The position numbers were made by a program, and so were the translations under genes. From positions 12,276,001 to 12,340,000 of the forward strand of contig OZ281495.1 in the NCBI GenBank assembly GCA_965637545.1: a stretch of 64,000 bases of DNA. Direction: 5' to 3'. Shown piece by piece: positions 121 through 25,356 of this stretch. Source of the DNA: Phallusia mammillata. Lineage: Eukaryota. The notes under the pieces are model-generated. The model did not search any database. It had not been told where the DNA came from and worked only from the letters and a program-made list of their open reading frames with translations. Each line of letters opens with the position of its first letter. Position 1 is the first letter of the stretch.

Positions 121-1363
121 ATTGCACGTTAAGTTTTACAGCTCTGCTCTCTGATCGATGATGATCATGTGACCTTTGATGGCACGTCACTAGTCTGTTG
201 TTATCAAGTGGCGTAAGTATCAGTTGTACCCACACAAACTGAGCGAATAGTAAAACAAAACAAAACATTTCATATTGCACCATAACAAACATATCTTTTT
301 TTTCGGATAACTTGATCCGTATTTTACCTGTTTTCCAATGTATGATTTGTTTCCAAATACAACACTGATATTATCTACATTTGCATCAAACTGATCGCAG
401 AATAGCAGTACGCTGTCATTATGCTTGAACGTCTGTTCTTTGCCGGCATTGTTCAAATCCAACACTTTACCTGTGTCAGTTTACATACACTTCAGACAAA
501 ATAAAATCCGTTTGTAAAGCTTTCGATATTGTCGGCGATTTTTACCTTTGTAACATTTTGGTGTTGGACCTTCCCATTGAGCAAACTTGTTACAAGTTAC
601 AGTGGCTTGACGTCCTATGATAGTTGAATTTTCGATCAACACTGTGTTGTTGCATTGTAAAATTGCCTTGCGTCCATAAACCATGTCTTGTTCATTAAAT
701 GGTTTGGAAATGATATCATGTTTCAATTTTGGACAATCTATGGACGTTCAACTGATTTGTTATATCCTCTACTATAGTCTATAGCCTATGTTACCAAAAA
801 ATCCATATTATCAATAAAAAAAGATTAACTCAGAAATATAGAAATATAGAGTTAACTTACATTTTATTGAGATTTTCGGGGTGACATAATTCATTCTTCT
901 ACTACAACAGCAGAAAAAAATCCAGTCTTGCAACTGGATTGAACTTTCATTGAACAAGTTTGGTTTTAGTATAGTTATGCGAAAAATACTTCTGTTTGAA
1001 GATTTTCGTTCCTCTTCAATATTAATTAGTGATTGATTGAATACGCTGATGCGGTTGAACCAGCTGGCTATTTGATATGTTTTGTTTTTATACCAGTTAA
1101 AATTTAAGTAATGACTGCCGGGTCTGTACGTAAAGTCAATGTTAATTGTGATGTTTGAAACACCGACAGCCCATTGAAATGACTGATTGTTAAGTCCGTT
1201 CGTCGATGCAACCGACGCGTTCCAACATTCACCTAAAAGTAACACAGTAAATAGTACTTTCTATTTTTGTTGTTAAGTGTATCAACTCACCTCCATATGT
1301 GCCCGTGATCATTACAAAACATAACAAGCTGGTAAAATTCCACTGAATGAGACAAGAATACAT
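121..1363 (-). CDS. Ig-Sushi-Ig membrane receptor paralog 1 (5' part only; gene continues beyond the window start)
   Basis: Exons 1363-1291 (ATG, signal peptide MYSCLIQWNFTSLLCFVMITGTYG), 1232-861 (V-like domain), 737-546 (Sushi: CP..C..C..W..P.C), 470-328 and 238-121 (Ig with C..C). All junctions are GT-AG with consistent phases, and the exon layout matches paralogs 2 and 3. Confidence 0.88.
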
Positions 1364-2338
1364 TTTGCAAAGTAAAAGCTCTAAGTAGGCGAACGTTCGA
1401 CAGCTGTCTGATACATTTCTACACACAAAGTTTGGATTGCAACTAGCTCACACAAAAGGTTTCGTGTGAGTGTGTGGTGCGGTGTTTCGTGTGAACGCCT
1501 ACACATGATATGCACCTCCTGTTCTTACGCCTTAAATAACCGTTAGTCAAAGTAAGTTCTTGCTTTAAAGCGTTAGTATAAGTGACATCACAAACTTTTG
1601 ACAGTCATTTTTTGGTGTGTCAGAATTGGAAGATACCGTCAATTGAAGTAGTTGTAGTTGATACTGCAGGGTCATTCTGCTTGAAACAAACCAGCATTGA
1701 GTCACGTTTTGCACCCTACCCTTGTAACAGTCACATGCCACCAATCTGTGGGGCTTCAAAATCTTTATTGCTTAGGCCTAGATCATCTTGAGGTGAAATT
1801 GTGTCCAGACTATTGTGATATTAAGGGTAACAACAGGGCTCGGACACTGACTGTTTGTAATGTAAGCTAAACGATCAACTGCTACGATCCAAAAATAATT
1901 TTCGCAAAACATTTAAGCGAGATTAATACCTTCACGCCTTTTTTATGTTGCACTTTTTATTCCAAGAAATAACCCACTTGTTTTTTATTCAACGTTAAGG
2001 TGAATTTGACGCAGCGTTTCGCAAACGTCATAAATATCGAAGATGTCTAACATCATGCTCTGAATCTGAACAAGTGATGGCAATCCATGACATGACAAAT
2101 TTTTATTTACAAATATTCGACGAACAAACTATGTAGAGAATGAAAATACGAACGTTTTAGAGAGCATTTGTTGTCTACGTTCAATTGCAAGCTGGCATTT
2201 AATATTCATATGCCCAACGACCGTTTTAAACAAATACGAAGCTTGTCTAAATGTTGTTTGCAAAGCAGAAGAGGCAATGGACGTTGTTACCTTAAAATCA
2301 TACACTTTTTCAAGTTATTTTTATAATAAGCGTTTGAT

Positions 2339-5300
2339 TTATTTGTATTGGTTTGCCACCGGGAGTTCGTAGATTTCACTTTCCATTGGATACTTAGGCT
2401 TCATATCCATGTACCGACTTGTGTTGGCTGATCGCATTCCCATCCTTTGAGATGGACCTGGTCGATTCGGTCTACAAAATATGATAAATTATTACCAGTT
2501 TTTACTTTGTCATGATGTTAGGACATAGTCGTTAATGAAAGCACTTAAATTCGAACACATAATTTCAAATCACAACATATTCCTTCAAAACGCATTTTAA
2601 ACAGTTTTTTTCTCGAAAAAGGTTATACATAGCGAATTTCCAATTTAGTAAACAGTTTTGCTAAATTGGATATTTGAATAACGACTTTTATCCAACTACA
2701 ATTTATTTAAAACATTTTTTCGGTGAAAAAATACCTTCCTACTGTCGAAATTGAAACCTCCTTTTCATTTGGTGCAACACTGTAACGGGCGGTTGAACTC
2801 GATTTCTTATCTAAAACAGTCGATTTTATGCTAAATACATTTCTTTTCTAAATATATAAAATATAAGTGGCACAACTAGTTAACCGATATTGTCACTAAG
2901 AAATCTACAGTTTAAGTTATGTTTATACAAAACAAGTAGTTGACAGAAATCAAACCCGATTTGCATCATGTACAAGCAATTAAAATAGCAACAATATTTG
3001 CATACACAGTATGGTGCAGATAAGCATTTTCGATACCTTTATTTTGACTTCTATTTTTGGTCCAATCATTACCAATCTTGAAACTCAAAAGCAATGCTAC
3101 CACAATGGCACAGCATAACACTGCTATAAGTGCAGCCACGGTAGAAGATATGGAATCACTTTCAACAGCTGCATTTCGACTATCAGTACCAGTTTCATTG
3201 TTCGCAGTAACGATTAATTTGACCTCGTGAGTTTCTGGCGACTTAATCACAATTAGATATTGGCCCAAGTCCCTTTCGGTCACCTGCAATGGTTTTCAAG
3301 TTCAAGTATTCATGAACTTTAGTGTGATCATTCATGTATCAACTTACGTTTGTGAAGTGGAGAACAACTTTGTTTTCAGTATGATTGGTGACATAGTAGA
3401 TGTTGCCAACTTCTTTGCCTACGAGAGAAAATAATGTTGTTGCAGGAACGCAGTTGCAAAGTAAATATAAATCTACGCAACAGATCAGTTGCCGCCTACT
3501 TTAGCTTGACATGAACACGAACTGGTGGACTTCCATATTTAGCGCACTTCGGATATTACTGGGTTTGGTGTTTGCTTGTTATAGGTCTTGCACTAATTGC
3601 ACCATGGTCTATCTGGATCACGGTGTGATAATTTTGCCATAAACATACAAACCAGTCTGTCATTACCTTGTATGAATGCTGTAACTGCACTGTGGCCTGA
3701 TATTGTGGGATTGGATTTAAATTTGAACTCCACATATCCATCTTGATACAAAGTCACACTTGAACTTACAATCATGTTTGGTGGAATGAGAGGTGGAACT
3801 GCAAAGGTTAAAAAATAATTAAAATCACTCAGTAAATTATATCGAAGTTTTCCTGAGTCGCCGAAACATTTGCGAATTGCATGCGAACTCTGCCATAAAC
3901 AAACAGTTGAGTGTAAAATGTTTGCCCTAAAAAAATATTTGCCCCCCCCCAAAAAAAAACAGTTTGCGTGTAAAATGCGTTTAAAACTTTTTTGTAAATC
4001 CAGCTACAACTACACGAAAAATCGATGATGTGATAGGTTATTTCCTTTTTTATTTATGTAAAACATAGAAAAACTCACCCACAATTTTTTGATAATCACA
4101 TGTTGTAAGTAATCTGACTTCTACTTACATTGTACGTGAAGTTTCACAGCTCTGCTCTGTGATCGGTGTTGATCGTGTGAAGTTTGATGACACGTCACCA
4201 GTTTGTCGTGATCCACAGCGGTTAGGATCAGTCTAACCCACACAAACTAAACAAAGCAAAACCAGTCGAGTTGAAACAACAATACCCTATTTTCCGTTCA
4301 TTTTTATGGTATAATTTAATTTTGTACCTTATTTCTGATGTGAGTTCTGTTTCTAAACGAAATGCTGATATTATCCATCTTTGTATTAAACAGGTCGCAG
4401 AATAGCAACAAGCTGGTATTGTGCTTGAAAGTCTGTTCTTTGGCTGCATTATTCATATCCAACACTTTACCTGTACAAGCAACGTGTTTTAACAAAATTT
4501 GCCTTTTATAGCAAAATTTGTCTTGTGAACCCCTCCGCTTCGTATAAAAAATGTTTGCTTTTTACCTTGGTAGCATTCGGGTATTGGACCTTCCCATTGA
4601 GCAAACTTATTACAAACAACAGTGGTATATCGTCCTGTAATAGTTGAATTTTGAACGAACACTGTGTTGTTGCATTGTAAAATTGCCTTCCTTCCATAAA
4701 CGCGGTCTTCCTTTTCGAGCGGTTTAGTGAAATCCAGGTTTGTGACCTTCGGACAATCTGAAAATATTGATGTCAACCTAAAACTATGTTCACATACTTT
4801 GTGAATAACCTAGTTTTTCACCGCCTGAAAACACTTGACATGACATTTATACTTACATTGAATTGAAATGTTTGGTGTAGAATACGTTAAACAGCAGCAG
4901 TACTCGCTCCTGTCAAAAATTTGAATTGAACTCTCATTAAATAGGTTGGGTTTTAGTATGTTGATTCTAAAAGTGATTTTTGTCGTGTATAAGGCTGTGA
5001 CAGTGGCCAGGGATGTGTTGTATATATTAAGCTTTTCAGACTTTTCACCATAATACCAACGAGCCAGCCTGACAGTACTTCCATTTTTATCGTGGTTAAT
5101 ATACAACAGACTTCTCTTAAGGTAGCGAGAAGCGTAGTTTATATTAATAGTTATGTTTTCGACACCAACAGCCCATTGAAACGACTGATTATTGTGTCCG
5201 TCCGTTGATGCAATCGACGCATTCAAACAGTCATCTAAAAAATACAAAATAAATTTTCTTTTCCCTAATGCAGTTTACATAGGCAGATAATTTTGTTTAT

Positions 5301-5412
5301 AATTCAAACCTATTACCGAATTTATTGAACATGACTTACTACTGTAGGCTCTTGCAATCATCGCAAAACATAGTAAGTTTCCTACAATCCAATCCGTTTG
5401 GATCAAACACAT
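2339..5412 (-). CDS. Type-I membrane receptor paralog 2, 520 aa: SP - atypical V-like Ig - Sushi - Ig - Cys-less Ig - TM - Tyr-motif tail
   Basis: Exons 5412-5340, 5234-4857, 4757-4566, 4470-4328, 4246-4129, 3798-3667, 3418-3348, 3283-3037, 2810-2735, 2471-2339 total 1563 nt, with an open frame from ATG to TAA. TM is STVAALIAVLCCAIVVALLLSF. Tail ends ...SRYMDMKPKYPMESEIYELPVANQYK*. Confidence 0.9.
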
Positions 5413-7298
5413 TTTGCTAATTCTCTGAAAGCCTTTACTTCTTGCAAACAAAACGGTTTAAATGGTACAAGGCATGTCATGCAAGGCTTGATCCACCCAC
5501 GTAAATTTGATTTCGCGTGGTTCACGTTGCCTTCTTAAGATGGTATAGCCCACATCTATTGCCTACCATTTGCACAAACAACCCAGTCAACTACAAACTC
5601 TCCCAATATTTTTGGCTGTGTGACCGAAGTCACTATGTGTTTAAACATAATGGTTTTTAGTGCCAACAGCAAATGCGATAACCCACGGAATATTACAATA
5701 TAATGCATGCATTTTACTTTTATAAACCATACCCAGAAAAAGTTTTGCTGTTTGACAACATTAGACTACAACAATGGTATCATTTTACTTTGTTCTTTCT
5801 AGCTCGATTTCAGCAATAGTAAACCACTATCCGTAATAACAAAAACAAATGTTCTTACTTATTTCTTCTTTTTAAAATAACTTTTACAAAAAATTTGCAA
5901 TATTTTGATTTCAATGCTGACAAAATTGACTCAAAATTTTCAGATTTCTCAGTCTTATATTGCTCCAAGCCTCCAACAAACTTGCAGCCAAATGTTAAAA
6001 ACGAAAGAAACAAAGTAAAGCTAGTTTTATCACATTTTTTTGCTATTCGCGTGAAATTGTATAATGTCATGTTAGTGTGTGTCTAAATGTTTTGACTTTG
6101 TGGCATAAACTTTCTCAGTCCATCCGACCTGAAAAAATTAGCCAATTGAAAAGCAAGATTGTATTGGTGTGTACCGACTTTAATATCTGGACAGAGGTGT
6201 AAACTATGAATATTATCTACCTGACGTTAAACATTTGGAAAGGTTCATTATTGTCAATAGCTAATGCTGTGTTGCTTAAATAATGTTTAATAAAGATCTA
6301 TTTACTCAACATTTAAGTGGTTTAATGAAAATTGCTTTGTGTCTTTCAGCGTATAAGTTTAATTGATTGTTTGATGTCGTTGCTGGTACAATTGGCCACA
6401 CACAAAAAAATATCACCACAAAACATCATACTTAACCAATCGGCTGTATGAAAATAAAGTGCTCGTGTATGTCATAAAATGTAGTTTTAAACCCCGGGGC
6501 TAATGTGGTTTTGTAGAATCCGTGAAACTCAGAAAGAAGCCATAACTGTTTTGGGGTCCCTCAATGGTGGGAATCCCTGGTTGTGCCCTATGCAGCAAAT
6601 AAAAGAAACGTGACAGCTATTTTTTTTACTTTTTGTATTTGAATTTTTGCACCTGTACACAAATCGATAAACATTTGTGTACAAAGTGCAAAATTATGTG
6701 CACACAATTTTCCAAATTAATTACATTTTCATTAATTACAGTGCCCAATTTGTCACACACATTGATTACAGTGCCCAATTTGAACTTAACGCACTAAATC
6801 GTCAGTACCCTCTTGTGTGGCTAACGTCCCCAAGTAGCGCTGATGCCCACGTTGTATACGTATTTTACTTACGTAACATGCTTGTACAGGTGTTTCTGTT
6901 TATCTTGTATATCACAGGTTTAAGTGGTTTTGGCGTTAAACTTGAAACTATGTAAACAAACATATTTTCTTGTGAGGCTGCGTATAGTTTGTTTCGTCTA
7001 ACTGGCATCATAGCAAATTGTTCCCGTCCGCGTACATTAAAAAAAATAATCTTGAGACAGGATGAATTAACAAAAAGGGGCCGTTACCAGAAAATAGTTA
7101 AAAACTACATCCTAAACGTTATTCTGGCTACAAACAAAACGATAAAAGTTAAATAATATAAAATTTTATTTGCAAACATTCGGCTAACAACCCATGCAAA
7201 AAAATAAACAAGTTACACACGTTAAATAAAAAGAAGCTTTGTGCAAGATTGATATTGATACCGCAAACAGATTCAGGCGAGTATAACGCCCGTTTCAT

Positions 7299-9985
7299 CT
7301 ATTTGTATTTGTTTGCCTCTGGGAGTTCGTAGATTTCGCTTTCAGCTTGGGGATTCGGCGTAACATTTATGTACCGACTTGGGTTGACTGGCTGCACCGC
7401 CGGCCTTTGGGAAGGTCCTGATTGATTAGGTCTATAAATATGGTGAAATTGGACAAATTTTTAAACTTAAATTGTACATCACGGTATAGCGATGCGTAAA
7501 ATAAAAAAGGATAAATTTGGGGTTAAGGCTTATGCAATGGTTGAAGTGAAACCATAAACCCCTACAGTTTCGGTCCATCTGCCTATCACAGTTTACCTTC
7601 TTCCTGTGGAGTGAGAAACTGCTGTATTTTCTTTCGGCGAAACAGAGTAACGGACAGTTGAGCTCTCGTGATTTTCTAAAACAACAAAAAATTAACTTTT
7701 ATCACGAAATCTAACAAAATTACAACAGCAATGTGACCCAAATCAAACCCGTTTTATTTTAACTTAAGCCCGTATCCGAACCGGACCTACAGAGCCCAGT
7801 CCGACTTTCAACTCTGGTCTTAGGTACAAGAAAGTGACAAATGTTACTTCACATTTAGTGCAATAAACGATATTTCTTACTTTTGTCTTTGCTTCTTTGC
7901 CTGATCCAATCTTTTCCAATCTTGACACCGAAAACTAAGACAACTACAGTAACACAGCATAAGACTGCAGTTAATGCGGTGACGGTTGAAGATTCATAAG
8001 CTGCATTTTGACTATCGTTGCCAGATTCTTTGTTATCAGTAACGATAAACTTGACTTCGTGGGTGGTTGCGAAAATTTGTAGAGACTTTATCACGATTAG
8101 ATATTCGCCCAAGTCCAAATCAGTCACCTGCAATGAATTTCAACCTCGGTGTTCAAAACAGGTTTTAATAAGTTAAGTTATGTACAAGTTCAATAACTTA
8201 CTTTCGTAAAATGGAGAATTACTTTGTTTTCAGTTTGCATGGTGACGTAGTAAACATTACCAACTTCTTTGCCTACAAGAGGAAATAATGTTGTTACTGG
8301 AATGCGGTTACAGAGTGCAGTATAAGACAACAGGATGCAGCAATTGCCGCCTACAATTTGATATGTGTCTTGTTTTGATGCACTTTAATGATTAGTTTAC
8401 TCCGGATCTTGCAACGCTGTGCGCTTGTCATTATACCACCATTGTTAACTACATGTGGCAATTACCCTTGGACATAACATCAGTGTTATTACCTTGCTTA
8501 AAAGCTGTAACTGCACTGTAGCCCGATAACGTCGGGTTGGATTTGAACTTGAACTCAACATATCCAGGTTGATCCAAAGTCAAACTTGAACTTACAGTGG
8601 TGTTTGGTGGAATAAGAGGTGGGACTAGATTAAGTAACATATAAAAATAAAATTACGACCTTCCGCAGTTAGACAGGTTAGGGGACATCGACGGTCAGAT
8701 TATATGCCGAAACTAAAATCAATATAAAATAAGACAATTAAGGTAACCATGTTCATACGTTGTATTCATAATCAACCCTTCTAGCTTGCTACCTACTTAC
8801 ATTGTATATTGAGTTTAACAGCTCTGCTCTCTGATCTATGTTGATCATGTGACGTTTGATGACACGTCACTAGTTTGTTGTTATCCAACGCAGTAAGGAC
8901 CAGTTTTACCCAGACAAACTGAAACAAGAAAAAACAATGTATCGTTTGTCCCTCAATGAAGTTCTCTTATTCGTGTTGCTAAACTGACAATACAACTTTT
9001 TTACCTGATTTCCAAAGTACGTCTTGTTTCCAAACAAAATGCTAATATTATCCATGTTTGCATTAAACTGGTCACAGAATAGCAAAACGCTTGCATTATG
9101 TTTAAAAGTCTGTTCTTTTCCAGCATTGTTTATGTCCAGCATTTCATCTACACATCAAACGATGGTCAGATATTACAAATTTAACTTACGCACTGTTATT
9201 ATAAAAATATTGTTTACCGTTGTAACATTCTGGTATCGGTTCTTCCCATTGTGCGAATTTGTTACAAATGATATCAACTTGACGTCCCACGATAGTCGAA
9301 TTTTTAACAAACACTTTACTGCATTGAACAGTTAATTTGCGTCCATAAACTAGGTCTTGCTGTTGGACTTGCGTTGTTCTTTGTACATTTTTAAGTCTCG
9401 GACAATCTGGGGATGTATAAGATAAAGAATTGAGATCTTTAAATAAAGAAACTAATTTACTTTACTTACGTTTAATTAAAATGATCGGCGTTGTGAAACT
9501 TAGCTCTGATCTACACAACCAGGCAGTGTCATAAAGCTGAATTGAACTTCCATTAAATAATTGAGTCTTCAGAATAGCGATGCTGAGAATACTACTTTTT
9601 GATGAGCTATTGCTTGTTATTGTAACTAGTGATTGGTTGTAAACGCTTAGACTGCCACTATACCAATTTCCAAGTCTGTATGTTTCATTTTTATAGCTAT
9701 AAATCCTTAGGTATACATCATACAGATAGTCATATGTGACATTAATGTTGATTGTTACATTTGTAAAACCAACAGTCCATTGGAACGATTCATTTTTGTA
9801 TCCGTTAGTTGATGCGACCGATGCGTTCCAACATCCTCCTGTAATATTTTCGGGATTATTTCTTAGTTGTTACGTAATGCACTTGCTAACAAACTTTACA
9901 AAACCTACTTACCTGTACATACGCCTGCAAACAGCAACAAAAATACCAAAACTCGAAAAATGCACTGAAACGAAAATGTGCTCAT
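7299..9985 (-). CDS. Type-I membrane receptor paralog 3, 517 aa, same architecture
   Basis: Exons 9985-9913, 9838-9470, 9406-9218, 9147-9005, 8918-8801, 8624-8493, 8272-8202, 8127-7881, 7675-7597, 7431-7299 total 1554 nt, with an open frame from ATG to TAG. Tail ends ...PSRYINVTPNPQAESEIYELPEANKYK*. Confidence 0.9.
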
Positions 9986-10489
9986 TTTGTGGCCTTCTAG
10001 TCTAACATACTAATGTTTCGGCTGTATCAACGTTCAGTTGACTGGTGTATAAAATAGGCATGTAAAACAAGGTATACAAGCAGCCCACACAGAACAGTTT
10101 CGTGCAGTCTATATGCGATCCGTATTTGGTGTGTTAACGCCTACGTGTTGCTGCACATTACACTCGGTAAGACAGGTCAAATGGAATTGTTGCAGATCAT
10201 TTTTAAACACGTGTAACGAATTGCGTTAGTTGTTCGCCTATTTTCAGTTTCTATGTGTTTCACAAGACGAAGTTCATATTGTTGAAAGAAGTCGATTATT
10301 GTACAGTATTAATGCATAATCACATTTATAAAATATGTATTAATCACTTTGGTTTCTATTATACACGTAAAAGTTTTAATTAGACTAAAATCCAACGAAA
10401 TAATTGTTGATCATGTCTATTCTGTATTAGGACAATATTAAAGTTCAACAAGTCAACTTTGTAGAGGTTTTCTGGCAAATGTATTTTAT

Positions 10490-10980
10490 TTTGACGTTTT
10501 GACGTCCTATGCAGGTCGCCTTCATCAGGGTGAATGACATTAAACGCGCGTAGTACAGTGCATGGTGAACAAAGGAAAAAAAGAATGGAACGCAAGCATG
10601 TCACTACGCAACGAAAACACTGCGCGATACAGAAATAAAAGCTCCCGGGCCACAACAGACCCCGCTTTAAAATCAATACGGTCGCCTTGTGATTGGAAAG
10701 GGCCGACTTCTTTGCGTCGCTGTCGGCAACATCCCGTTGATGTTCTTTTAGCAGGTGGTGAGTGACTTCGGCATAGGCATTGGCGTCCAACCTGCCAACA
10801 CTCTGCGCAAGCTACTGAGTCACCGGAAAGATCCCACCAATACCTTTAAACAACGACTTTTGTATTTCTGGTCCCTGCGCCGAATGTTCCTTAATAAATA
10901 TCGGGGAGACTGATAGGTATCGGAGAGACACTCAACACCCGCCGAAAAGAACATCAACGGGGATGTTGCCAACATTGCAT
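10490..10980. mobile_element. Degenerate Penelope-like retroelement fragment (GIY-YIG endonuclease region) with an internal inversion
   Basis: The plus strand 10750-10975 gives (with frameshifts) QPANTLRKLLSHRKDP, PCAECSLINIGETDR and LNTRRKEHQR/DVAN. The minus strand from 10749 leftwards continues KEHQRDVADSDAKKSALSNH...PDEGDL. These match the Penelope P.ntL...KD / C..C...YIGET.R / R..EH motifs. An inverted repeat of about 25 bp lies at 10725-10749 and 10945-10970. Confidence 0.75.
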
Positions 10981-13900
10981 CAGGAAATGTGTTGAAATGT
11001 CGCCAAACAACAAAAAGAAGGTTGTCAAATCTGTCAAATGATTTGTCTTTCATACGTGAAGCTACTAGATAACAATCATAAAAGGATAATAACTACTAAG
11101 CTAAACAAAAAAGCAAAACTGGTATGTTAGTATGTGACGGTAAGCTTGTGCATCACGGGCTGCAAACAATGTAATGATACATTTACAGCCCTAGCAAAAA
11201 ATGGCATACAAAAAGAGAGGCAACCCTTTTTCTTGATGCTCAGGTATTTGTGTGAAAATTGTACAACATTTTTGGTCGCAAACATTGAAACTGTTGATGA
11301 CATTGCGGTGTTAGACTAATAGGCCATAAACTATGGAAAGCATGGGAATCGCCAGGTTAGCCCCAAACCTGGAAGTACGCGCTGTAAGAAAAAACGTGAA
11401 GTGATCGGGCGTAATCACCACATATATGTCTAGAGTGCGTATACGGTCAATAGTCCCTATTGACTTAATATTGATATTAGCCAGTTACACAAACACAATG
11501 CATCACATCGCATCACATTACTACACTATTAAAGCTAAAGTTTTAGTTTCAGACATTCAGCAGCGTCACTTTTGTCTTGTAACAGCAGCAGGCGTTTCGT
11601 AGATTGGACTTGCAGTAGGGGCTTCGTAAATTTGAGTTTCTCTGCAAAGAGTCAAATATTTGACATGCATTGAGTTTTATGATACACATGTTGTATTTTA
11701 AAACGTAGAAATAAAACACATGTCTACTACGTACACAACGCAAAATTATGCTTGTAATATTCTTAATCACGCTAAGTTTACCTCTGCGCAAGTGGCGATT
11801 GACGTGTTTGGTGGAGCACATGTCCGAACAGGCAAATTATTGTCACCTTAAAACCAAAACAATGGTTTATGCCAGCGGTGGCCAAACTACGGCCCGCGGG
11901 CCGCATCCGGGCCCCAGTCCTGTTTCATCCGGCCCGCCAAACACCTTGCCTGTTTTTTTCCAAGCACCATATTAGATAAGAGCTCTTCAACCGGGGTTCC
12001 GTACAACCCTTTCAGGGGTTCCGTGAACTTTAAGGGTTGCACGGAAAATAGCAATTCGAACACGAATGGTTCATAGTGTCATTAACCCTGTTTACATGCG
12101 TCGTCTGCAAACGGATCGGATTAAGCCTCAAGCCGGCTTGAGATTTGATCCATTGCAGCGTCCTATTTACATGCGCATGGCGCAAGGCTCGATCCGCTTC
12201 GCCTTGTACGGTGAACTTACCCCAAAAATAGTAATTTATTTTGCTTTGTTGGTTAAAAAGTCGTTGTTTAATTGTAAATCGCAGCCATATGGCAATTATG
12301 CACCTTTGTTTACAATAAGACAAGAAATGTTATTTAGATCATTTTGTCAGAAAAAATTCAAGCTGTTGCGGAGCGAAAAGCTGTCTTTATGTATTGTATT
12401 TGTCAACTAAAATGCCAACAACTGTTTCTTTTCTAAATTGTATTGGTTTCAGAAGTTGCTGGGCTTTCCTCTAGCTATAAAGTATAGTTCTGAGTAGTTC
12501 ACTGTGAATCTGTTTTCAGCAAGTTTGTTGGTTATGAAGCATGATGGCATTAAACAAGGTTGGGAAAATAGCCATTACATTATGTTTGAGACTGATTACT
12601 AACTAAACACTTCCTGCAGAAGTCATTGTAGGTGTCTGTAAAGTTAGCTTTGTTGGTATTTCTGACTGCTTTTTAAATCACTACAAATATTACTTGATAA
12701 TTGTATTGAAACAAAACATGTATAAACCCAGGTCACAAAAAGGTAAAGCAAAGTTGCAACAACACTGTATAAAATACTATTTATTCAGGTACGTTTTTGG
12801 TTTCATTCATTCAGCAAGTAAAACATGTATTTTTGGTTGCAAATCTTTTGACACTATCAAGAGGATGATGGTAATGCTATGTCATAATGTACAACAGACC
12901 TTAAAGAAGTGCTTAATTGTTTAAAAATCTCAATATCCTTGCTTCTATGTTTGATGAAGTCTGTCATAAATTTTACTTTTTACACATTTGACAAAGACAT
13001 ATATATCTGAACCTACACCAATGAGTACTGGTCAAAAAGCGGAAGGACACAACAACATGAATACATTTACAGCACCATGGTGTAATTTAAAATACTCATT
13101 GAAATACAGGCTTCACATCAGTTATCATTTTATCACTGTTTTGTGTGTTTGGTGTTCTGTTGTGTGAATACTGATATGATATTTTTCATTTAGTTGCTGT
13201 ATCTTTCCACAATTGTCTTTTTATGGACTCCACCATTGCCTTTCTGCTTGTGCCCTGTTCATTTTCGTTCCCAAATAAATCCGAAAATGCATCATGTTCT
13301 TGTGTTGATGTTTGTCTTACAAAAAAATAACATGTGAATATGTACTGACCCAGTGGGTAGACAATTAAAACACACCGTATATCTGACTCCTTGTATAAAC
13401 AAACTAATGCTGTTTAACTAAACCTAAAAGACGCAAACTAAAATAATGTTCCCACATTATATTTCAATAAGGCATGTCACGCAAGCGCCACTGGCGACTA
13501 AACACGCAACACAAAAGTCACCGCGCCACGAATCAACTGTGAGATATCAATTCTAATGCGTACTCTAGTCACTTATGCACTGAAGGTAACTCTAGGTAAC
13601 TTAAGGTAACTCTAGATAACTTAAGGTAACTGATTTTAAGTTTAAAACACGTCGGTCTTTATAGCATTCAGGTCATATAGTTGTTATGCGGCATAGTTAT
13701 AAAAACGTACGCCCGAGAAGATTAACTGAGTTCTAAACCGTAATTATTCTTTAAATCGCTTATAGAAGTGTCAAGTGTAACATGGCTGGAAGCAGTTTAA
13801 AACGTTGCTTCACGTTAACACGTAAGGGGACGATAAAACGATAGCCTTAAGCAGTAATTGACCGGTTCAGTGATAAGAAAAACAGGTTTAAATAGCCGGT

Positions 13901-14047
13901 CAAGCTTTTGTGTAGAAAAAAGGCGAGTTATGAACGGGTTTGACCGGGCCAATAGCTACGTCACAACAATTACATGCAAGTTTTAAAATTAAAAGTCCAA
14001 AGTCCGATATGTTTTAAATGAAAAGTCCAAGGTCCGATACAAATACA

Positions 14048-14410
14048 GTGCCTTAGTACCATTACAAAATAGCCACATGTTATTATGTAGGTGTTAGTCC
14101 CACAAAATAAAACTTAACATGTGATTGTTAATACATTTAACAGTATATAGCATTGGGTGGTGCCTTAGTATCATTACAAAAAACAACAACATGTTATTAT
14201 GTAGGTGTTAGTCCCACAAAATAAAACTTAACATGTGATTGTTAATACATTTAACAGTATATAGCATTGGGTGGTGCCTTAGTATCATTACAAAAAACAA
14301 CAACATGTTTTTATGTAGGTGTTCGTCCTACAAAACAAAACATGTGAATGTGGAATGAAGTTAAAACCAACAGTACATGCTATTGGGTGCTGCCTTACAT
14401 TACAAAATAG
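14048..14410 (+). repeat. Tandem repeat, ~112-116 bp unit, about 3 copies
   Basis: The unit starting (G/C)TGCCTTA recurs at 14048, 14160, 14274 and 14390. Confidence 0.85.
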
Positions 14411-14967
14411 CCACACAATTTTATCACATTGTATAGATTTTGTTACAGTTATGACAGAATGGCTTTACATTTATAAATCACATTTACATATGGTTTGTGG
14501 TGTTGTGTGATGAAATAGTTATGACATGCATCTACTGTTCATGCTCACTTCAGTCACTTGCATTGAAATCAATCTGAATATAGTTTCTTAATATCATCAA
14601 AAAATGTCCACTTATTTTTATGCTGTTGTTGCATTTCTGCAAAACTGGGTTTAAATAATTTTACACTTAACAGAAACATGTTTTCTATATAGCAAAACCA
14701 GCATTGAGGTAAAACATTTAGTAATCCTTGTAACTATTTTTCTTGAAAGATGTATGTTTTGGAACAAGACTACACTTACATGTCATACTCTACCATTTGT
14801 TAGGCATTTGTATGTCATGTATATAATACCGACCACAGAATTTGCAGAGGGGTTTCTAAATCTGCTAACATCAATTGTCACCACCATATATTAAGTACAT
14901 AAACTGAAGCTGAACAGATAGGCAAATTAAAAATTTTTCTAGTTGGTCAACCTGCAAGCAATGGGCC

Positions 14968-15358
14968 GGGTGACACTAAAACGCTGAATGGGCGGGACGG
15001 GCGGGACGTCGCGGAAACCGTTAAATATCGGGTAAATTGCTGACGGTTAGTGCTATTAGGGTTGGGTTGAGGTTTTGTAAAAGTATGTGAATCAAAAAAT
15101 GTCACTGCCTAAAACTTATTCAGCTGTTTCCTGACATTCAGCAAAAATGCTTGGGCGGGAAGTCTCCCTCGGCCGCTGAATGTTTCGCTCGGTCGCGGAA
15201 GGTATCCGGGGGAATTATTTTTAATGATTTTCTATTATAAAACCTTATCCCAACCTTAATAGCACTAACCGTCAGCAATTTAACCCGATATTCAGCGGTT
15301 TTCACGACGTCCCGCCATCTCGCGCCCGTCCCGCCCATTCAGCGTTTTAGTGTCACCC
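14968..15358. mobile_element. Mutator (MULE)-type MITE (fourth layer)
   Basis: Long imperfect TIRs (over 100 bp) starting GGGTGACACTAAAACGCTGAATGGGCGGG; perfect 9-bp TSD CAATGGGCC at 14959-14967 and 15359-15367. Confidence 0.85.
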
Positions 15359-17003
15359 CAATGGGCCTGACAACAAGCCGACTATACTTTCCCGTTGCAC
15401 ATTTCGCCTGATCGGCAGTTTACACCCTAAGTCTATTTCTACAAAATGCTTTCCGATGCAAAGCAAATAAACTGGCAAATAACATATTTTTACCCTCCAA
15501 CTAACCTGACAACACAGCAAACGCGCCTTAACAAGAAGGCGAATTAAGCACGAAACGGATTAAACCACCTAGTCGGGGCGGATCGAGCGTGAAACGGATT
15601 CAATCCGTTTCAGCGGCAAAAACGAGAGAAGCGGATTGACGAAACGGATTAGAATCCGTTTCAAGCGTCCATGTAAACAGGGTTATTGTTTCGAACAGCA
15701 ATGCTCGCCTGTGCAATATTGTTAACCTTTGTTATACGATTGATCAATTGTGACGTAATATACACAACCTTGTTACACTCTAGCTAAGTTGCGAGATTAA
15801 TGTAGAAACGACCGATCCAAATAACACGGCAATGCGTTTCAGTTAACCGTTTAATTCAAGTCAACCTTTGTGATGTGCTTTGGATGTGTATGCATCTTTT
15901 TTCTTTGATGTAGCCTAGGCCTACTTGTATTACATTCATTAAAATTATTTTATGGGGGTTCCGCAAAGTTTGACAAAATACCGTAAGGGTTTCGCGTCAC
16001 TAAAAAGGCTGAAGAGCACTGTATTAGATAATATATATATTTTACAATAATATATTATTTTACTACTACAATAATATATATTTCTGAAAAAGGAAACAAA
16101 CGTTTGTAATTGCCACAAATTAACTTGTAAACATTGAATTCGCCCATAACATTAACAGCTATAGACATTCTATGACGTAACAATGCGTCTGATGGTTTCT
16201 ATCATCACGCCATGTTCTGACCTGAAGTAACCTGAGGTTTTCGGGTGCTGTGGTGTGCTTTTTTAAACGAGGTCATTCTATTGCAGGGGTGGCATATATA
16301 TTTTACAATAATATATATATTTTACTACTACAATAATATATATTTTAATAAAGATGGCAACCAGTTACGACAAATTTTACGTAAATCTTATTTAATCCGG
16401 CCCTCCAGTGGCAAGACAGTTGCAAATTTGGCCCTCTGGTAAAAAAGTTTGGCCACCCCTGGTTTATGCGATGAAACGTTTTGGATTCTTGACCAAAAGG
16501 CTTTGTTCGTGTTCTACCAATTATCTCTTAATACGGATATGTTATTTTGAATGCGTTTGGCATAGTCAGTAAGTAAAGAATGAAACCTTATTTGATATAA
16601 GAATGAAACAGGGTATGAAGAAAAGATGGGTTACATACAAGCAAGTAGCTACAGCGCTGCCGACTATCTGTTCAAAGCCAGCACACTCATAGCAAAATTA
16701 GTGGTAACAAGTAGTCAGAATTTTTTTGTCTGTTTTCGTTTAAATTGGCCTGGTCCAAATATGTAATTATCATTAGGTTTTATATATTCACAGTACGTTG
16801 CATCAAATAGAGTCCGAGACTTGATCGATTTATGTTTGACAATAGACCACAACTTTTTCACAGTGCAAAAGATCAAAACTATTTTTTCTAAATGGTGTCC
16901 TATATTTATTTATTTAGGATTCCAGATTAAATGTAATTCCTCATAAGGCCATCAACTTTTTCAAGCTGCAACTTTCACTTTCAGCGAAGCAACACACCGT
17001 TAC

Positions 17004-19923
17004 CTTTAATCTTCTTTAAATAATTTTGTCCCACTTTTATAGCAAGAAGCAATGCAGTCGCAAACACAAGGCAGAGGACAACTGATTTGGTGTGTTGTTG
17101 TCAATGTTATCTTTTCCTGTGTTTTCAGTAACAATTATTGTCACTTTATGAGTAGTTGCAAAGATTTCTGAAGACTTTATCACGATCAAATATTAGCCAA
17201 GGTCCGACTTGGAAACCTGTAATGTTAAGTTGCGTTTTTGAATATGGCATAAACATTACAAATATTATAAAAAAGTGACGTTTGTGAAATAGAGGACCAC
17301 TTTGTTTTCAGTTTGTTCCGTAACGTAGTAGAAATTTGCAACTTCTTTGCCTGCAAGTAAAAAGCTCTTGTGGGAACACTAATTTGAATTATACTAGTTT
17401 ACCTTTTTAGCAAACAATGCATTTGCGCGATTCAACCGGTGTTACAATTTGAAACTTGTCACAGCTACTTCGCATTTACTAACTGATATCTTTTACATGT
17501 GACATTTATATTTACCTTCCTTGAATACCGTAACAGCACTGTGCCTCAAAGTTGGATTAGATTCAAAAGCGAATTCCACTTTACCAGGTTGTTGCAATGT
17601 TACATTGGAATACACTAGTATATTAGGGGAAATGAGTGGTGGAACTGAAATAAAAAATCGGTTTATTAGTCTCTTAGTGTTAAAAAAGTAAGGTAAATGG
17701 TTCATTTCCAAATTACCAAACGAGAGAACATAACTCGAAAAAGGTTGTTTCATACAATCACAATATTTTGTTAATAGCAAACTATTTCCCAACGGTCCAA
17801 ATCAAGACTCCATATGACATAAGCCCGGAGATCAGGTTCTCCTAATTACTACGCTGCTAGGACTTACGGATATATCGTCCTATGAGTTATATAAATCTAA
17901 TTGTATGCTTTGGAAGTTTTGCCTTAGTAATATAACATAGCTTACCTTTTGATCTAAGTTAGAATTAGTACACGAAGAGTGAAAGAAATTTACCCATAAT
18001 TGGCAATTCACTAATAGGCTGAATGACGTAATCTAGATTAACGTGCGTAATTTTTGTGACGTCAGTTGATAGCTAAGCTAGTTATTGTTAAAAGGTAAGT
18101 AGAACGGTACAAAGACAAAGTCAATCTTCTCAAATACGCTATGTGGGATAGTTTGATTCTATATTAGGCAAAAACACAAGCTAATGAGTGCCATTTTATA
18201 ATTGATTAAAGCCCGTGCATGCCCTGAAAAATAAAATAACAACGGTTTATTGATGGTTTCGTTTTTGTAACTTGCTTTAAGTTTGTTTTATGACTGTCAC
18301 TTATACATTACGTACAATATCCGCCACCAACTTACTACGTTGAGTTGAACAAATCTGCTTCCTGATTGACGTTGATCGCGTGATGACTGATAGCACGTCA
18401 CCAGTTTTTTGTGATCCGAAATTTTTAGTTGGTATTTGACCCACGCAAACTAAATTACACAAAACCTAGCTGGTTAAGGTGTAACAATAAAATGAAATAA
18501 CAATTGCAAAGAACTTTGTTCACTAGTAAGTCATTATTTAGAAAAAAATGTGCCTTGTTTTCAACGTAGGTGTTGTTTCCAACGTAGGTGTTATTTCCCA
18601 ACGTAATATTGATGTTTTCCATATTTGAATCAAATTGATCGCAAAATAGCAATACACTTGTGTTGTGCCTAAAGGCTTGTTTCCCAATAGCAGAGTTCAA
18701 ATCTAGAACGCGGCCTGCGTAAAAGGAGCAATAAAATTATTTCATTTAAACATTTTTTAACGTCCGAAAACCATAAATCCCAGCAACTTGATTCGGGAAA
18801 TCATATCTAATACTATTGCGATTCTCGTGACGATTTACATTTCTCATACTTTAAAGCAGTGGTTCTCAAACACTTCAAGCATGCGGCGCCTCAATCAACT
18901 TAATTTTCTTTTCGAGACGCACTTTTCAGAGTCAGTCAGACTGTTGACACTTCAGAAAATAATAAGCTTTAAAACGTTGTTGTGCATAACACACCAGAAA
19001 ATGTTAAAATAGCAAACTTGGCGGCTCTTGGCGTAGTAGTGTTGAGAGACACACTTCGATTTGTATAATTCAGGATAAAAAAGTATTCGAATTTGTTGAA
19101 AAGTTTTGTTGAAAAGTATTGTTTTTTTCACAACCAACTTTGATGTATTTACCTTTGTAACATTCTGGTGCTGCACCATCCCATCGTGCAAACTTGTTGC
19201 AAGTAAAATTGGCTTGACGGCCTACAACATACGAATTTTTAACAAACACTGAATTTAGACATTGGAGTGTTACTTCGCCTCTATCAATCAGGTCTTGCTG
19301 GTCGACTTGTGTTTTGTATATTGCACATTTTCGGGAAGTGAACAATCTGGAAATGTGTAAGGTTAACGGGTTTAATGTGTAAGGTAACTTATTTGAAAGC
19401 ATAACGCACTTTTCTTTACTTACGTTTAATCAAAATGTTTGGGGTAGAGTAACTTGAGTTATAATAACAACCCTGTGCGTACACGACAATCGAACTTCCC
19501 TTCACAAAGTTAGGCGTCAGAATAGTGACACTGAGAATAATTCTTCCTGGTGTAGTATTTCTTGCTGCGATTGTCACTAGAGATGGGTCGTAAACAAAAG
19601 TACTTCCGTCAAAATAAAAATTTGCAAGAAATTGGGCCTCATTGTTATGGCTACGAATGTCTAGGTACAGATCATACGTATAGTTAAATGTTAATTGTTA
19701 CATTGTTACATTTGTAACACCGATAGCCCATTGAAATGATTCGTTGTTGTATCCGTCAGTTGATGCAACTGACGCGTCCAAACAGAGCCCTAAAAACAAA
19801 TCGAACGTGTATTTGTGACTTTAAAGATTATGTTGACAAAATTATCATACCTGTACATCCACCAGTAAAAACCAACAAACATAACAACCTTCCTAAAATC
19901 GAATGCACTAGAAAGTTACACAT
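17004..19923 (-). pseudogene. Receptor paralog 4, pseudogene
   Basis: Homologous exons 19923-19851, 19789-19424, 19346-19153, 18714-18554, 18449-18332, 17644-17516, 17350-17280, 17216-17004. Lesions: in-frame TAA at 19698-19700, a frameshift in the Sushi exon (194 nt), TAA at 17193-17195, and a frameshift before the TM segment. No tail exons were found. Confidence 0.88.
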
Positions 19924-21445: not shown

Positions 21446-22396
21446 ATGGATGATAAAGATTTTTCTGATATGACACTTGTTCGACTTGACGAAACAGATA
21501 CAGCTGATGTGCAGAAGTTCATCAACGAGCACTACATACCAAATTGGCCGTTTCTTAAAGCTGCATATTTTGACCCAGTGAAAGTGAGAAAGGCGTTTTA
21601 TCAAGCGATAGAAAAGGATATTCAAGACAACACTTCTTTGGGTAAAAATGATTGTATTTAACGTTTTCGTTACATATTTTTGTTGAACTTTTAAAAATTA
21701 AGCACTCATTACCAACATAAAAGATTTGCTAGTTTGAGATATGCTCTCTACCGGTCGGGTTCGCCGAGAGGTTTCTTTGAATTCGGGTTGGGGTTAGGGT
21801 TGGGAATTAGGAATAAATCGGGATTCATAATCTAAAAACTTTTCTACGCAAAAATGTTGCTGAACGTTAATGTGCATTTGTAAGGTTAGATTATTCTTTA
21901 GATGCAGTTTGACATGGTGATGATGACAATAAAATTTTGTATTACAGGTTTTAGATTGAAGTGCAATGGAGAACTTGTTGCTTGTATCATTAATTCGATA
22001 CAAACAAAGCAGACAAGCACAACGCCTGATGAAAATCCTATTCTGCCTAAATACTCACGATTCAAGACATGGTGTTTGCAAGACATCTTTTCTCGATTAA
22101 ACACCTACCGATATCTTTACATGGGCAAGTTGGCCGTAAATCCAAAATACCACAGACACGGCCTTGCTAAAAAGCTTGGGTTAGCTTGTGAGAAAGTGGC
22201 CTGTTTGTCAGGCTGCAATAACATAGTAGCGATGTCCGTCAATGCATACGTGGGCCAAAATATGAAATCCTTGGGTTATGACCTTTTGCACGAGGTACGG
22301 TTGATTGAGTACGTGGATGACGCCACTGGTTTGAAGCCATTTTTAATTGAAAATCCGCCACATACCCATGCTGCAGTATGGCGTAAGAGTGTATGA
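21446..22396 (+). CDS. GNAT acetyltransferase, insect arylalkylamine N-acetyltransferase (iAANAT)-like, copy A
   Basis: Exons 21446-21641 and 21948-22396. Acetyl-CoA motif A LAVNPKYHRHGLAKKL; C-terminal YVDDATG..PF.IENPPH matches the iAANAT-like family. The 5' end is uncertain: an in-frame acceptor at 21393-21394 may link to an unidentified upstream exon. Confidence 0.82.
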
Positions 22397-25142: not shown

Positions 25143-25356
25143 CAGTGATTCTCAAACTTTTTTTTGTTGCGACGCCTCTGGAAAAGTCTTCTGGACTTGC
25201 GACGCACCAGCAAATAAAAGTCAATTAAGAAACTTATTATTAAAGTTGTGTTAATTGATACAACAACAAAATTACGAAACGGAAATATTCTGCGACGCCC
25301 TTGGAAAATTGAAACGACGCACCAGGGCGTCGCGACGCACAGTTTGAGAACTACTG
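25143..25356. mobile_element. hAT MITE
   Basis: TIRs CAGTGATTCTCAAAC / GTTTGAGAACTACTG; perfect 8-bp TSD GCGTAAAC. Confidence 0.9.

What the first reader, a model, noticed from the sequence alone, without database searches (positions are those of the whole stretch)
121..19923. Tandem array of Ig-Sushi-Ig-Ig transmembrane receptors: candidate undescribed recognition or immune receptor family
Seen: at least four tandem paralogs share one exon plan giving SP, V-like Ig, Sushi/CCP, Ig, Cys-less Ig, TM and a ~70-aa tail with tyrosine motifs and no kinase domain. The distal domain is highly divergent, the proximal domains are conserved, and one copy is dead. Established: tandem, birth-and-death arrays of Ig receptors with variable distal domains and Tyr-motif tails are typical of recognition systems (KIR/LILR/NITR-type arrays, Hydractinia Alr genes), and Botryllus fester uses a Sushi domain. 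Inference: a single Sushi between Ig domains in such an array is an architecture I do not recognise from a named family, and may be an invertebrate-chordate innate immune or allorecognition receptor set.
Basis: partly seen in the sequence, partly recalled or inferred. Interest (0 to 1): 0.87.

Follow-up and report, generated by a model that had tools for sequence, protein, structure and literature searches.

The report
FcoR-like Ig-Sushi receptor gene cluster
Four neighbouring genes (two complete, one cut by the window edge, one dead) encode surface receptors laid out like the 'fester co-receptors' (FcoR) described in 2024-25 for tissue compatibility in the colonial sea squirt Botryllus, so the array is real but its layout already has a name.

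Summary
Four tandem minus-strand paralogs lie at 121-19923.

- **Gene B (2339-5412):** 10 exons, all AG/GT splice sites, 520 aa.
- **Gene C (7299-9985):** the same exon plan and phases, 517 aa.
- **Gene A (121-1363):** runs off the window start.
- **Gene D (17004-19923):** a pseudogene with two in-frame stops, two frameshifts and no tail exons.

Tools confirmed the Sushi domain (above Pfam's cut-off), one transmembrane helix, and a tail of about 77 aa with tyrosine motifs. The first domain is a beta-sandwich, best matched by V-set Ig, but one of two models also fits lectin-like sandwiches. Domains 3 and 4 look Ig-like only by sequence signature. I could not fold them, because spliced proteins have no reference to hand to the tools.

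The claim that the architecture is unnamed is out of date. Signal peptide, Ig, Sushi, Ig, Ig, membrane helix and tyrosine-motif tail at 520-610 aa is the published FcoR family of Botryllus schlosseri, which includes an FcoR-only cluster.

Sequence homology to FcoR, expression, polymorphism and species were not tested. Other agents of this scan call the genome Phallusia mammillata, a solitary sea squirt. The scan had already reported an FcoR-like cluster 7.7 Mb away in this genome.

Verdict: probable new member of a known kind. Moderate interest.

The parts
121..1363 (-). Gene A, 5' part only. Exons 1-5 are 1363-1291 (signal peptide), 1232-861 (domain 1), 737-546 (Sushi), and 470-328 plus 238-121 (Ig2). 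The gene continues beyond the window start.
   Evidence: Splice-aware modelling and translation, 299 aa open.
2339..5412 (-). Gene B, complete, 520 aa. Exons: 5412-5340 signal peptide; 5234-4857 domain 1; 4757-4566 Sushi; 4470-4328 and 4246-4129 Ig2; 3798-3667, 3418-3348 and the start of 3283-3037 Ig3; rest of 3283-3037 stalk and membrane helix; 2810-2735 and 2471-2339 tail.
   Evidence: All nine introns are AG/GT and the reading frame is open. The Sushi exon scores 21.7 bits against a Pfam cut-off of 20.7. One hydrophobic helix starts near residue 416 and there are 15 N-glycosylation sequons in the ectodomain.
2360..2419 (-). Gene B tail motifs: SRYMDM (2419-2402, YxxM type) and EIYELP (2377-2360, YxxP type). 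RYSV lies in exon 9 at 2787-2776.
   Evidence: Translation and coordinates.
7299..9985 (-). Gene C, complete, 517 aa, with the same 10-exon plan: 9985-9913, 9838-9470, 9406-9218, 9147-9005, 8918-8801, 8624-8493, 8272-8202, 8127-7881, 7675-7597, 7431-7299.
   Evidence: All introns AG/GT, same phases as B.
7320..7379 (-). Gene C tail motifs: SRYINV (7379-7362), which fits the broad ITIM consensus S/I/V/L-x-Y-x-x-I/V/L and the FcoR 'core-1' motif YxxV, and EIYELP (7337-7320). RYSV lies at 7652-7641.
   Evidence: Translation and coordinates.
17004..19923 (-). Pseudogene D. The signal-peptide exon 19923-19851 is intact. The domain-1 exon 19789-19424 has an in-frame TAA at 19700-19698. The Sushi exon 19346-19153 has a frameshift. 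The Ig2 and Ig3 exons are recognisable (18714-18332, 17644-17280). The membrane exon 17216-17004 has TAA at 17195-17193 and a frameshift. No tail exons were found.
   Evidence: Six-frame reading and exon profiles.
9986..17003 (.). A 7-kb spacer between C and D with no family exon. It holds a 114-bp tandem repeat at 14048-14341 and short open frames with no Pfam match.

Best explanation
This is a tandem cluster of FcoR-like receptor genes. B and C are intact, A is open as far as the window shows, and D is decayed.

Each gene encodes a heavily N-glycosylated type I membrane protein, in this order:
1. signal peptide;
2. a ~125-aa distal beta-sandwich, most likely V-set Ig-like, with non-canonical cysteines;
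3. one Sushi/CCP module;
4. a two-cysteine C2-like Ig domain;
5. a cysteine-less Ig-like domain;
6. stalk and one membrane helix;
7. a tail of about 77 aa.

Proposed mechanism (inferred, not shown). The divergent middle of domain 1, residues ~31-90, binds a ligand or partner. Src-type kinases then phosphorylate tail tyrosines, which dock SH2 proteins. Part of the tail is shared between paralogs (RYSV, EIYELP) and one motif differs: YMDM in B, a PI3K-type YxxM, and SRYINV in C, an ITIM-type motif that also contains YxN. Paralogs would therefore couple similar recognition to different outputs.

The family most likely shares ancestry with the Botryllus fester co-receptors. This locus resembles the FcoR-only cluster on Botryllus chromosome 9 rather than the FF/FcoR pairs.
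For: - **Copies and models.** Four co-linear copies, conserved exon plan and phases, open 520-aa and 517-aa reading frames. dN/dS 0.1-0.5.
- **Sushi.** Pfam PF00084 at 21.7 bits, above the 20.7 cut-off, covering the whole model. Matches to DAF and Crry CCP modules at E 4e-4.
- **Domain 1 of B.** pLDDT 66, pTM 0.67. Foldseek top hits are almost all V-set domains such as CTLA-4, CD28 and VHH. All but three of the VIA-align top 50 are Ig V domains, Z 6.3-7.9, 86-107 residues aligned. ESM Atlas V-set clusters match at TM 0.52-0.56.
- **Membrane helix and tail.** Single hydrophobic helix and tyrosine motifs.
- **Published definition of FcoR.** Signal sequence, N-terminal Ig, Sushi, two further Ig domains, one membrane helix, tail with tyrosine motifs. 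Size 520-610 aa, and a third haplotype with FcoR genes only. First Ig domain encoded in one or three exons, clusters evolving by birth and death. A splice variant within exon 8 lies between the third Ig domain and the membrane helix; exon 8 here encodes the same region.
Against: - **No sequence comparison with any Botryllus FcoR.** Spliced proteins have no reference to hand to the tools, and no FcoR sequence was at hand. Shared ancestry rests on architecture alone.
- **No domain-1 relatives.** The domain-1 profile found no real relative in 1.84 billion representatives.
- **Domain 1 of copy C is ambiguous.** With its low-confidence N-terminal strands kept, it matches jelly-roll sandwiches (carbohydrate-binding modules, MAM, reelin) as well as V-set.
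- **Ig2 and Ig3 are unconfirmed by tools.** Half-domain exons give no Pfam or PDB match.
- **Tails differ from the published ones.** They lack canonical hemITAMs and the [A/D]VYxxV pairs. B has no YxxI/L/V at all.
- **No fester-family partner gene in the window**.
- **No transcript evidence**.
Confidence: 0.6

Rival explanations
1. A lineage-specific receptor or adhesion family that reached the same domain order independently by exon shuffling of Ig and Sushi modules. It would be unrelated to Botryllus FcoR and have its own function.
For: No sequence link to FcoR was obtained. Domain 1 has no detectable relatives. The tail motifs are not the published FcoR motifs. The Sushi exon starts and ends in phase 1 and the Ig-type domains span phase-1 boundaries, so whole-domain units are easy to shuffle. 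The Botryllus authors state that allorecognition genes have no obvious homologs outside familial clades.
Against: Five successive modules plus a tyrosine tail, in the same order, at the same size, in the same subphylum, again in tandem clusters with dead copies, is a lot to arise twice. Botryllus FcoR paralogs themselves average only 32% identity, so failure to detect domain-1 relatives is expected even for true homologs.
Confidence: 0.25
2. The distal domain is not an Ig domain but a lectin-like jelly-roll sandwich. The proteins would then be glycan-binding receptors rather than Ig-type recognition receptors.
For: Copy C's whole domain-1 model matches a phage baseplate, carbohydrate-binding modules, reelin repeats, MAM and a galectin at Z 7-8.7 over 100-120 residues. 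Its Foldseek list mixes carbohydrate-binding modules with V-set domains. The domain is 122-125 aa, lacks the canonical Ig cysteine pair, and its most conserved 30 N-terminal residues add strands in that model.
Against: Those N-terminal strands have pLDDT 40-53. With them trimmed, TCR V-delta is the best match (Z 7.8). Copy B's model gives V-set lists almost throughout in three searches. All Z values are in the range the tool calls 'middling'.
Confidence: 0.15
3. The array is a decaying or silent remnant: the copies are not expressed and have no present function.
For: One copy is clearly dead. None of the listed runs guessed to be RNA holds the stretch's sampled words, and the two I laid gave no contig. 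No protein from these genes is in the public protein library that was searched.
Against: B and C keep ten open exons with all splice sites intact. dN/dS is 0.1-0.5 despite saturated synonymous divergence, which unconstrained copies would not retain. The RNA runs are small and of unknown tissue.
Confidence: 0.08

Closest known systems
Fester co-receptors (FcoR) of Botryllus schlosseri (Rodriguez-Valbuena et al., PNAS 2025, PMC12582321; preprint PMC11507803; review PMC12065747)
   Same: Type I membrane protein with signal peptide, N-terminal Ig-like domain, Sushi, two further Ig-like domains, one membrane helix and a long tail with tyrosine motifs. Size 520-610 aa (here 520 and 517). First domain in a single exon in some members. 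Exon 8 covers the Ig3-to-membrane-helix region. Multigene tandem clusters with birth-and-death turnover. An FcoR-only cluster exists on chromosome 9.
   Different: Sequence homology was not tested. No adjacent fester-family (FF) gene or HECT ligase was seen in this window. The tails carry RYSV, SRY(M/I)(D/N)(M/V) and EIYELP instead of the published canonical ITIM (I/L/V-x-Y-x-x-I/L/V), hemITAM or paired [A/D]VYxxV motifs. Paralogs here are closer to each other (48-78% by domain) than the Botryllus average of 32%. By other agents' notes the host is a solitary, self-fertile ascidian of another order.
Fester family (FF: fester, uncle fester) of Botryllus
   Same: N-terminal Ig-like domain followed by a Sushi domain; polymorphic multigene family of ascidian surface receptors.
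   Different: FF proteins have three membrane helices, short alternatively spliced exons after the Sushi domain and no tyrosine motifs. The proteins here have two more Ig-like domains, one membrane helix and tyrosine motifs.
Vertebrate leukocyte-receptor-type arrays (KIR, LILR, NITR, NILT) and Hydractinia Alr
   Same: Tandem Ig-superfamily receptor arrays with variable distal domains, tyrosine-motif tails and pseudogenes.
   Different: By my knowledge of these families, none has a Sushi module between Ig domains. No activating type with a charged membrane helix and short tail is seen here. There is no sequence relationship.
Regulators of complement activation (CD46, DAF, Crry)
   Same: The Sushi exon matches their CCP modules. 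The FcoR Sushi was likewise aligned to CD46.
   Different: These proteins are strings of CCP modules without Ig domains. Here there is a single CCP between Ig-like domains.

Membership tests
FcoR (fester co-receptor) | Type I membrane protein: N-terminal signal sequence and a single membrane helix | tested here: met
   Hydrophobic N-termini are spliced in phase 1 to domain 1 in A, B, C and D. The hydropathy window passes threshold from residue 411 in B and C and nowhere else after the signal peptide; the hydrophobic run itself starts near 416. No dedicated predictor was run.
FcoR (fester co-receptor) | First extracellular domain is Ig-like (V-type in some members) | tested here: inconclusive
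   Copy B's model matches V-set domains almost throughout. Copy C's model gives mixed V-set and jelly-roll matches unless its low-confidence N-terminus is trimmed. pLDDT is 66-68. The published FcoR domain 1 is similarly weak (Foldseek E 0.5 to 2.7e-5).
FcoR (fester co-receptor) | Second domain is a Sushi/CCP module | tested here: met
   PF00084 at 21.7 bits against a cut-off of 20.7, model positions 1-56 of 56. DAF and Crry CCP modules at E 4e-4 to 1e-3. Four cysteines and the conserved tryptophan are present.
FcoR (fester co-receptor) | Third and fourth domains are Ig-like (C2-type) | tested here: inconclusive
   Signature only. Ig2 has two cysteines 42 residues apart and a D-x-x-x-L-V-T-C strand-F motif. 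Ig3 has D-L-G-x-Y-L-I with the cysteine replaced. Half-domain exons give no Pfam or PDB hit. Spliced domains could not be handed to the folding tool.
FcoR (fester co-receptor) | Cytoplasmic tail over 60 aa with two or more tyrosine motifs (ITIM, hemITAM, core-1 YxxI/L/V, core-2 [A/D]VYxxV) | tested here: inconclusive
   The tails are about 77 aa with 4-5 tyrosines. C has SRYINV, which fits core-1 and the broad ITIM consensus. B has no YxxI/L/V, only YMDM, YELP and YSVA. Neither has a hemITAM or core-2 pair (compare).
FcoR (fester co-receptor) | Size 520-610 aa | tested here: met
   520 aa (B) and 517 aa (C), against the range given.
FcoR (fester co-receptor) | Multigene tandem clusters with birth-and-death turnover | tested here: met
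   Four copies within 20 kb, one of them a pseudogene with four lesions. Copy-number variation between haplotypes was not tested.
FcoR (fester co-receptor) | Head-to-head pairing with a fester-family gene (chromosomes 5 and 11); absent from the chromosome 9 FcoR-only cluster | tested here: not met
   No other Sushi-like or domain-1-like exon anywhere in the 64 kb. A, B and C lie head-to-tail about 1-2 kb apart. This is compatible only with the FcoR-only type of cluster.
FcoR (fester co-receptor) | Detectable sequence homology to Botryllus or Botrylloides FcoR proteins | not testable with these tools
   No FcoR sequence was obtainable: the papers' supplements are not held. The spliced query has no reference. 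The domain-1 profile search returned only spurious repeat proteins.
FcoR (fester co-receptor) | Genotype-specific expression in vascular or ampullar cells, and polymorphism | not testable with these tools
   No RNA holder was found. The two DNA runs appear to be the same genotype.
Fester family (FF) | Three membrane helices and no tyrosine motifs | tested here: not met
   One membrane helix and 4-5 tail tyrosines.
ITIM-bearing inhibitory Ig receptors (functional class) | S/I/V/L-x-Y-x-x-I/V/L in the tail | tested here: met
   Met for C only (SRYINV, 7379-7362). B has SRYMDM at the same place. Phosphorylation and phosphatase recruitment were not tested.

The most novel reading that the evidence does not exclude
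FcoR-type receptors are not an invention of colonial botryllids. A solitary, self-fertile ascidian of another order would carry at least two FcoR-like clusters without fester partners. The Botryllus tissue-compatibility receptors would then have been recruited from an older ascidian immune-type receptor family whose original job was something other than colony fusion or gamete self-recognition.
Probability: 0.45. Interest if true: 0.7.

Novelty: new member of a known kind. Interest (0 to 1): 0.5.

Why it matters
Invertebrate allorecognition genes are said to appear abruptly, with no homologs outside close relatives (PMC12582321). If this cluster is truly homologous to Botryllus FcoR, and the genome is a solitary ascidian as other agents of this scan report, it gives that family an outgroup. 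It would show that the receptor scaffold predates colony fusion. It would also make the ancestral function testable, through where the genes are expressed, whether they are polymorphic, and which SH2 proteins bind the tails.

If the resemblance is convergent, it is a second example of the same modular solution. The family appears to be unannotated: no protein from it was found in the public library searched.

Tried and rejected
1. **Pfam on single exons with flanks and exact exons.** Only Sushi is detectable. Ig2 and Ig3 are split over two or three exons and stay invisible.
2. **Profile of domain 1 (A, B, C) against 1.84 billion representatives.** Three hits, each matched in 8-18 short stretches. 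The one I inspected (P0002) is an unrelated repeat protein. There was not even a self hit, so these genes are not in that library.
3. **PDB sequence searches with domain 1, Ig2a and Ig2b profiles.** Nothing meaningful.
4. **ESM Atlas by features with domain 1.** No usable hit.
5. **hhalign between the family's own domains.** No internal similarity, uninformative.
6. **Species identification.** The GNAT open frame at 25496-26113 gave no hit in the search for homologous proteins and only generic eukaryotic GNAT clusters in the Atlas. There is no tRNA or Rfam family in the window. The species therefore rests on other agents' notes.
7. **RNA support.** No run on record as RNA holds the stretch, and two guessed RNA runs gave no contig.
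8. **Searching this scan's notes by sequence.** Blank.
9. **Supplements of both FcoR papers.** Not held, so no FcoR sequences were available.
10. I did not hand the spliced 520-aa and 517-aa proteins, or the joined Ig2 and Ig3 domains, to Pfam, folding or homology tools.
11. **Rejected: one-to-one ortholog of a conserved adhesion molecule.** The copies form a tandem array at about 50% domain-1 identity, one is a pseudogene, and domain 1 has no relatives.
12. **Rejected: membership of the fester family proper.** That family has three membrane helices and no tyrosine motifs.


Full report
**What is in the sequence**

The window is AT-rich (about 36% G+C). Its first 20 kb carries short open stretches on the minus strand that repeat in the same order. 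tblastn of gene B's exons against the whole window finds four co-linear copies and nothing beyond 20 kb. Profiles built from each exon and searched against every six-frame open stretch give the same four copies (E 1e-10 to 1e-66 for all but D's shifted membrane-helix piece, 1e-3). They find no other credible exon, only one 10-residue chance hit at E 0.006. The repetition is far beyond chance.

**Gene models**

- Gene B (2339-5412) splices into 10 exons, every intron bounded by AG and GT, and gives an open 520-aa protein.
- Gene C (7299-9985) has the same ten exons and the same phases and gives 517 aa.
- Gene A has exons 1-5 in the window (1363-121) and runs off the start. An earlier first-reader note (s1-403094) describes the rest, which I could not see.
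- Copy D (17004-19923) keeps an intact signal-peptide exon but is a pseudogene. It has TAA at 19700-19698 in the domain-1 exon, a frameshift in the Sushi exon, TAA at 17195-17193 plus a frameshift in the membrane exon, and no detectable tail exons.
- The finding's limits, 121 and 19923, are exactly A's last visible exon end and D's start codon.

**Domains, and what was and was not shown**

- **Sushi.** The exact Sushi exon passes Pfam's gathering score (PF00084, 21.7 against 20.7 bits, whole model). It matches CCP modules of DAF and Crry (E 4e-4). It has four cysteines and the conserved tryptophan.
- **Membrane helix, glycosylation, tail.** The hydropathy window passes threshold from residue 411 in both B and C; the hydrophobic run itself starts near 416. 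There are about 14-15 N-glycosylation sequons in each ectodomain. The tail is about 77 aa with 4-5 tyrosines.
- **Domain 1 has no sequence relatives.** It is one exon of 122-125 aa. It has no Pfam match and no meaningful PDB sequence match. A three-paralog profile found nothing real among 1.84 billion representatives.
- **Domain 1 fold, copy B.** AlphaFold gives an all-beta model (pLDDT 66, pTM 0.67). Its matches are almost all V-set Ig domains:
  - CTLA-4, CD28 and nanobodies by Foldseek (E 7e-3 and weaker, TM 0.45-0.5);
  - sodium-channel beta4, CD226, nectin-1 and TCR V domains by VIA-align (Z 7.9-6.3, 86-107 residues);
  - V-set clusters in the ESM Atlas.
- **Domain 1 fold, copy C.** This replicate (pLDDT 68) is less clean. 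With its low-confidence N-terminal strands kept, it matches jelly-roll sandwiches equally well. Examples are carbohydrate-binding modules, MAM, reelin repeats and a phage baseplate protein at Z 7-8.7. With those strands trimmed, TCR V-delta leads at Z 7.8.
- **Verdict on domain 1.** I rate V-set Ig-like as the better reading, at about two in three, not as established. The domain lacks the canonical Ig cysteine pair. It has a cysteine at position 2 and one to three cysteines near position 112.
- **Ig2 and Ig3.** These are split over two and three exons. They show classic Ig strand-F signatures (D-x-x-x-L-V-T-C, and D-L-G-x-Y-L-I with the cysteine lost). No tool could confirm them. A spliced protein has no reference, so I did not submit it.

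**Pattern of divergence**

| Region | Amino-acid identity between copies |
|---|---|
| Domain 1 | 48-54% |
| Sushi | 52-66% |
| Ig2 | 68-78% |
| Ig3 | 78% |
| Stalk and membrane helix | 62% |
| Tail | 55% |

- dN/dS is 0.1-0.5 wherever dS could be estimated, so there is purifying selection and no domain-wide sign of positive selection between paralogs.
- Synonymous differences are higher in domain 1 (pS 0.70-0.80) than in Ig2 and Ig3 (0.42-0.55). This fits homogenisation of the proximal exons by exchange between copies, or an older split of domain 1.
- Within domain 1, the first 30 residues and residues 91-107 are conserved. The divergence is one central block, about residues 31-90, the C to D strands in the model. 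Invariant positions are no more common in strands than in loops (27% against 32%). I therefore do not confirm the 'three CDR-like loops' of a sibling note.
- DNA identity between copies is about 70%, introns included, so the duplications are old.

**The tail**

- B and C share T-x-R-Y-S-V and E-S-E-I-Y-E-L-P.
- At one position B has S-R-Y-M-D-M and C has S-R-Y-I-N-V.
- From established SH2 specificities (my knowledge, not tested here), YxxM is the PI3K p85 type and YxxP the Crk/Nck/Abl type. SxYxxV fits the broad ITIM consensus, and YxN is the Grb2 type.
- There is no kinase domain and no charged residue in the membrane helix.
- A signalling role through phosphotyrosine docking is therefore an inference.

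**Comparison with what is known**

The lead came from an earlier follow-up in this scan (s1-349154). It called another cluster 7.7 Mb away in this genome 'FcoR-like'. I read the sources myself.

- The fester co-receptors of Botryllus schlosseri are defined as type I proteins with a signal sequence, an N-terminal Ig domain, a Sushi domain, two further Ig domains, one membrane helix and a tail with tyrosine motifs (PMC12582321).
- They are 520-610 aa, and one polymorphic haplotype, on chromosome 9, holds FcoR genes only (PMC12065747; PMC11507803).
- Their first Ig domain is encoded in one or three exons, and the clusters evolve by birth and death.
- A splice variant inside exon 8 lies between the third Ig domain and the membrane helix. 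Exon 8 encodes the same region here.
- Their domain 1 is also only weakly Ig by Foldseek (E 0.5 to 2.7e-5).

The architecture, size, exon logic and cluster behaviour all match. What does not match, or is untested:

- There was no sequence comparison.
- There is no fester-family partner in the window.
- The tail motifs differ from the published ITIM, hemITAM and core-2 sets.

The literature held describes FcoR only in Botryllus and Botrylloides.

**Organism**

I could not identify it from this window, and run names were coded. Four follow-up notes on other windows of this genome name Phallusia mammillata. I use that as an untested lead. That species is solitary, and a review lists it as self-fertile (PMC9265791). 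If the lead is right, colony fusion and gamete self-sterility are both unlikely functions for these genes.

**Expression and polymorphism**

- None of the runs guessed to be RNA holds the stretch's sampled words, and the two I laid gave no contig. This does not show silence.
- Two DNA runs from one study give contig sets of identical lengths and positions, differing only in one short alternative contig, so they are probably one genotype.
- Alternative contigs at about 92% identity cover only 2378-4100, the 3' half of gene B. Their depth equals that of the reference contigs.
- 4660-8194 is one clean contig at that same depth.
- This could be a divergent second haplotype or a close paralog elsewhere.

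**Verdict**

Its reading as an unnamed architecture is superseded by the FcoR family. The most likely account is a new, unannotated FcoR-like cluster, probably in a solitary ascidian. Homology, expression and function remain to be shown. The scan had already found a sister cluster in the same genome.

Noticed in passing
window 2378-4100: In both DNA runs, alternative contigs about 92% identical to the reference cover only the 3' half of gene B (Ig3, membrane helix, tail) and include a 63-bp indel at 3923-3987. Their depth equals the reference contigs' depth. 4660-8194 is a single clean contig at the same depth. This is either a very divergent second haplotype or a close paralog that shares only the proximal half.
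   Followed up: partly
window 2735-2810 and 7597-7675 (exon 9 of B and C): Exon 9 is 76 or 79 nt long, entering in phase 1 and leaving in phase 2. Skipping it would shift exon 10 into a frame that ends after about 21-23 residues with no tyrosine motif. Such a variant would remove the signalling tail, much as the tail splice variants reported for FcoR3 and FcoR4 do. No RNA data were available to test this.
   Followed up: no
window 4857-5234, 9470-9838, 861-1232: Synonymous differences are clearly higher in the domain-1 exon (pS 0.70-0.80) than in the Ig2 and Ig3 exons (0.42-0.55). Only the first ~100 nt of the domain-1 exon still align between copies, at 78-80%. This suggests exchange between copies in the proximal exons and a conserved N-terminal 30-residue segment of unknown role, which is poorly modelled by AlphaFold.
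   Followed up: partly
window 18555-18605: An 18-bp tandem duplication (2.8 copies) inside pseudogene D's Ig2a exon repeats a six-residue unit (GNNTYV).
   Followed up: no
window 14048-14341: A 114-bp tandem repeat (2.6 copies, 94% matches) lies in the 7-kb spacer between copies C and D. The spacer has no family exon and no Pfam match on the two open frames I scanned.
   Followed up: no
window 21902-26420: There are at least two, probably three, paralogous GNAT-type N-acetyltransferase genes on both strands (Pfam Acetyltransf_1 and Acetyltransf_10). The nearest Atlas clusters are arthropod and nematode GNAT families. No close relative was found in the large protein collection.
   Followed up: partly
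window 30000-62000: Trypsin-fold exons at 51890-52240 and 60037-60357 (Pfam Trypsin), with look-alike open frames at 55066-55371 and 59852-60136, point to a tandem array of serine protease genes. Other first-reader notes exist on two further genes here, at 30206-32849 and 46463-49228.
   Followed up: no
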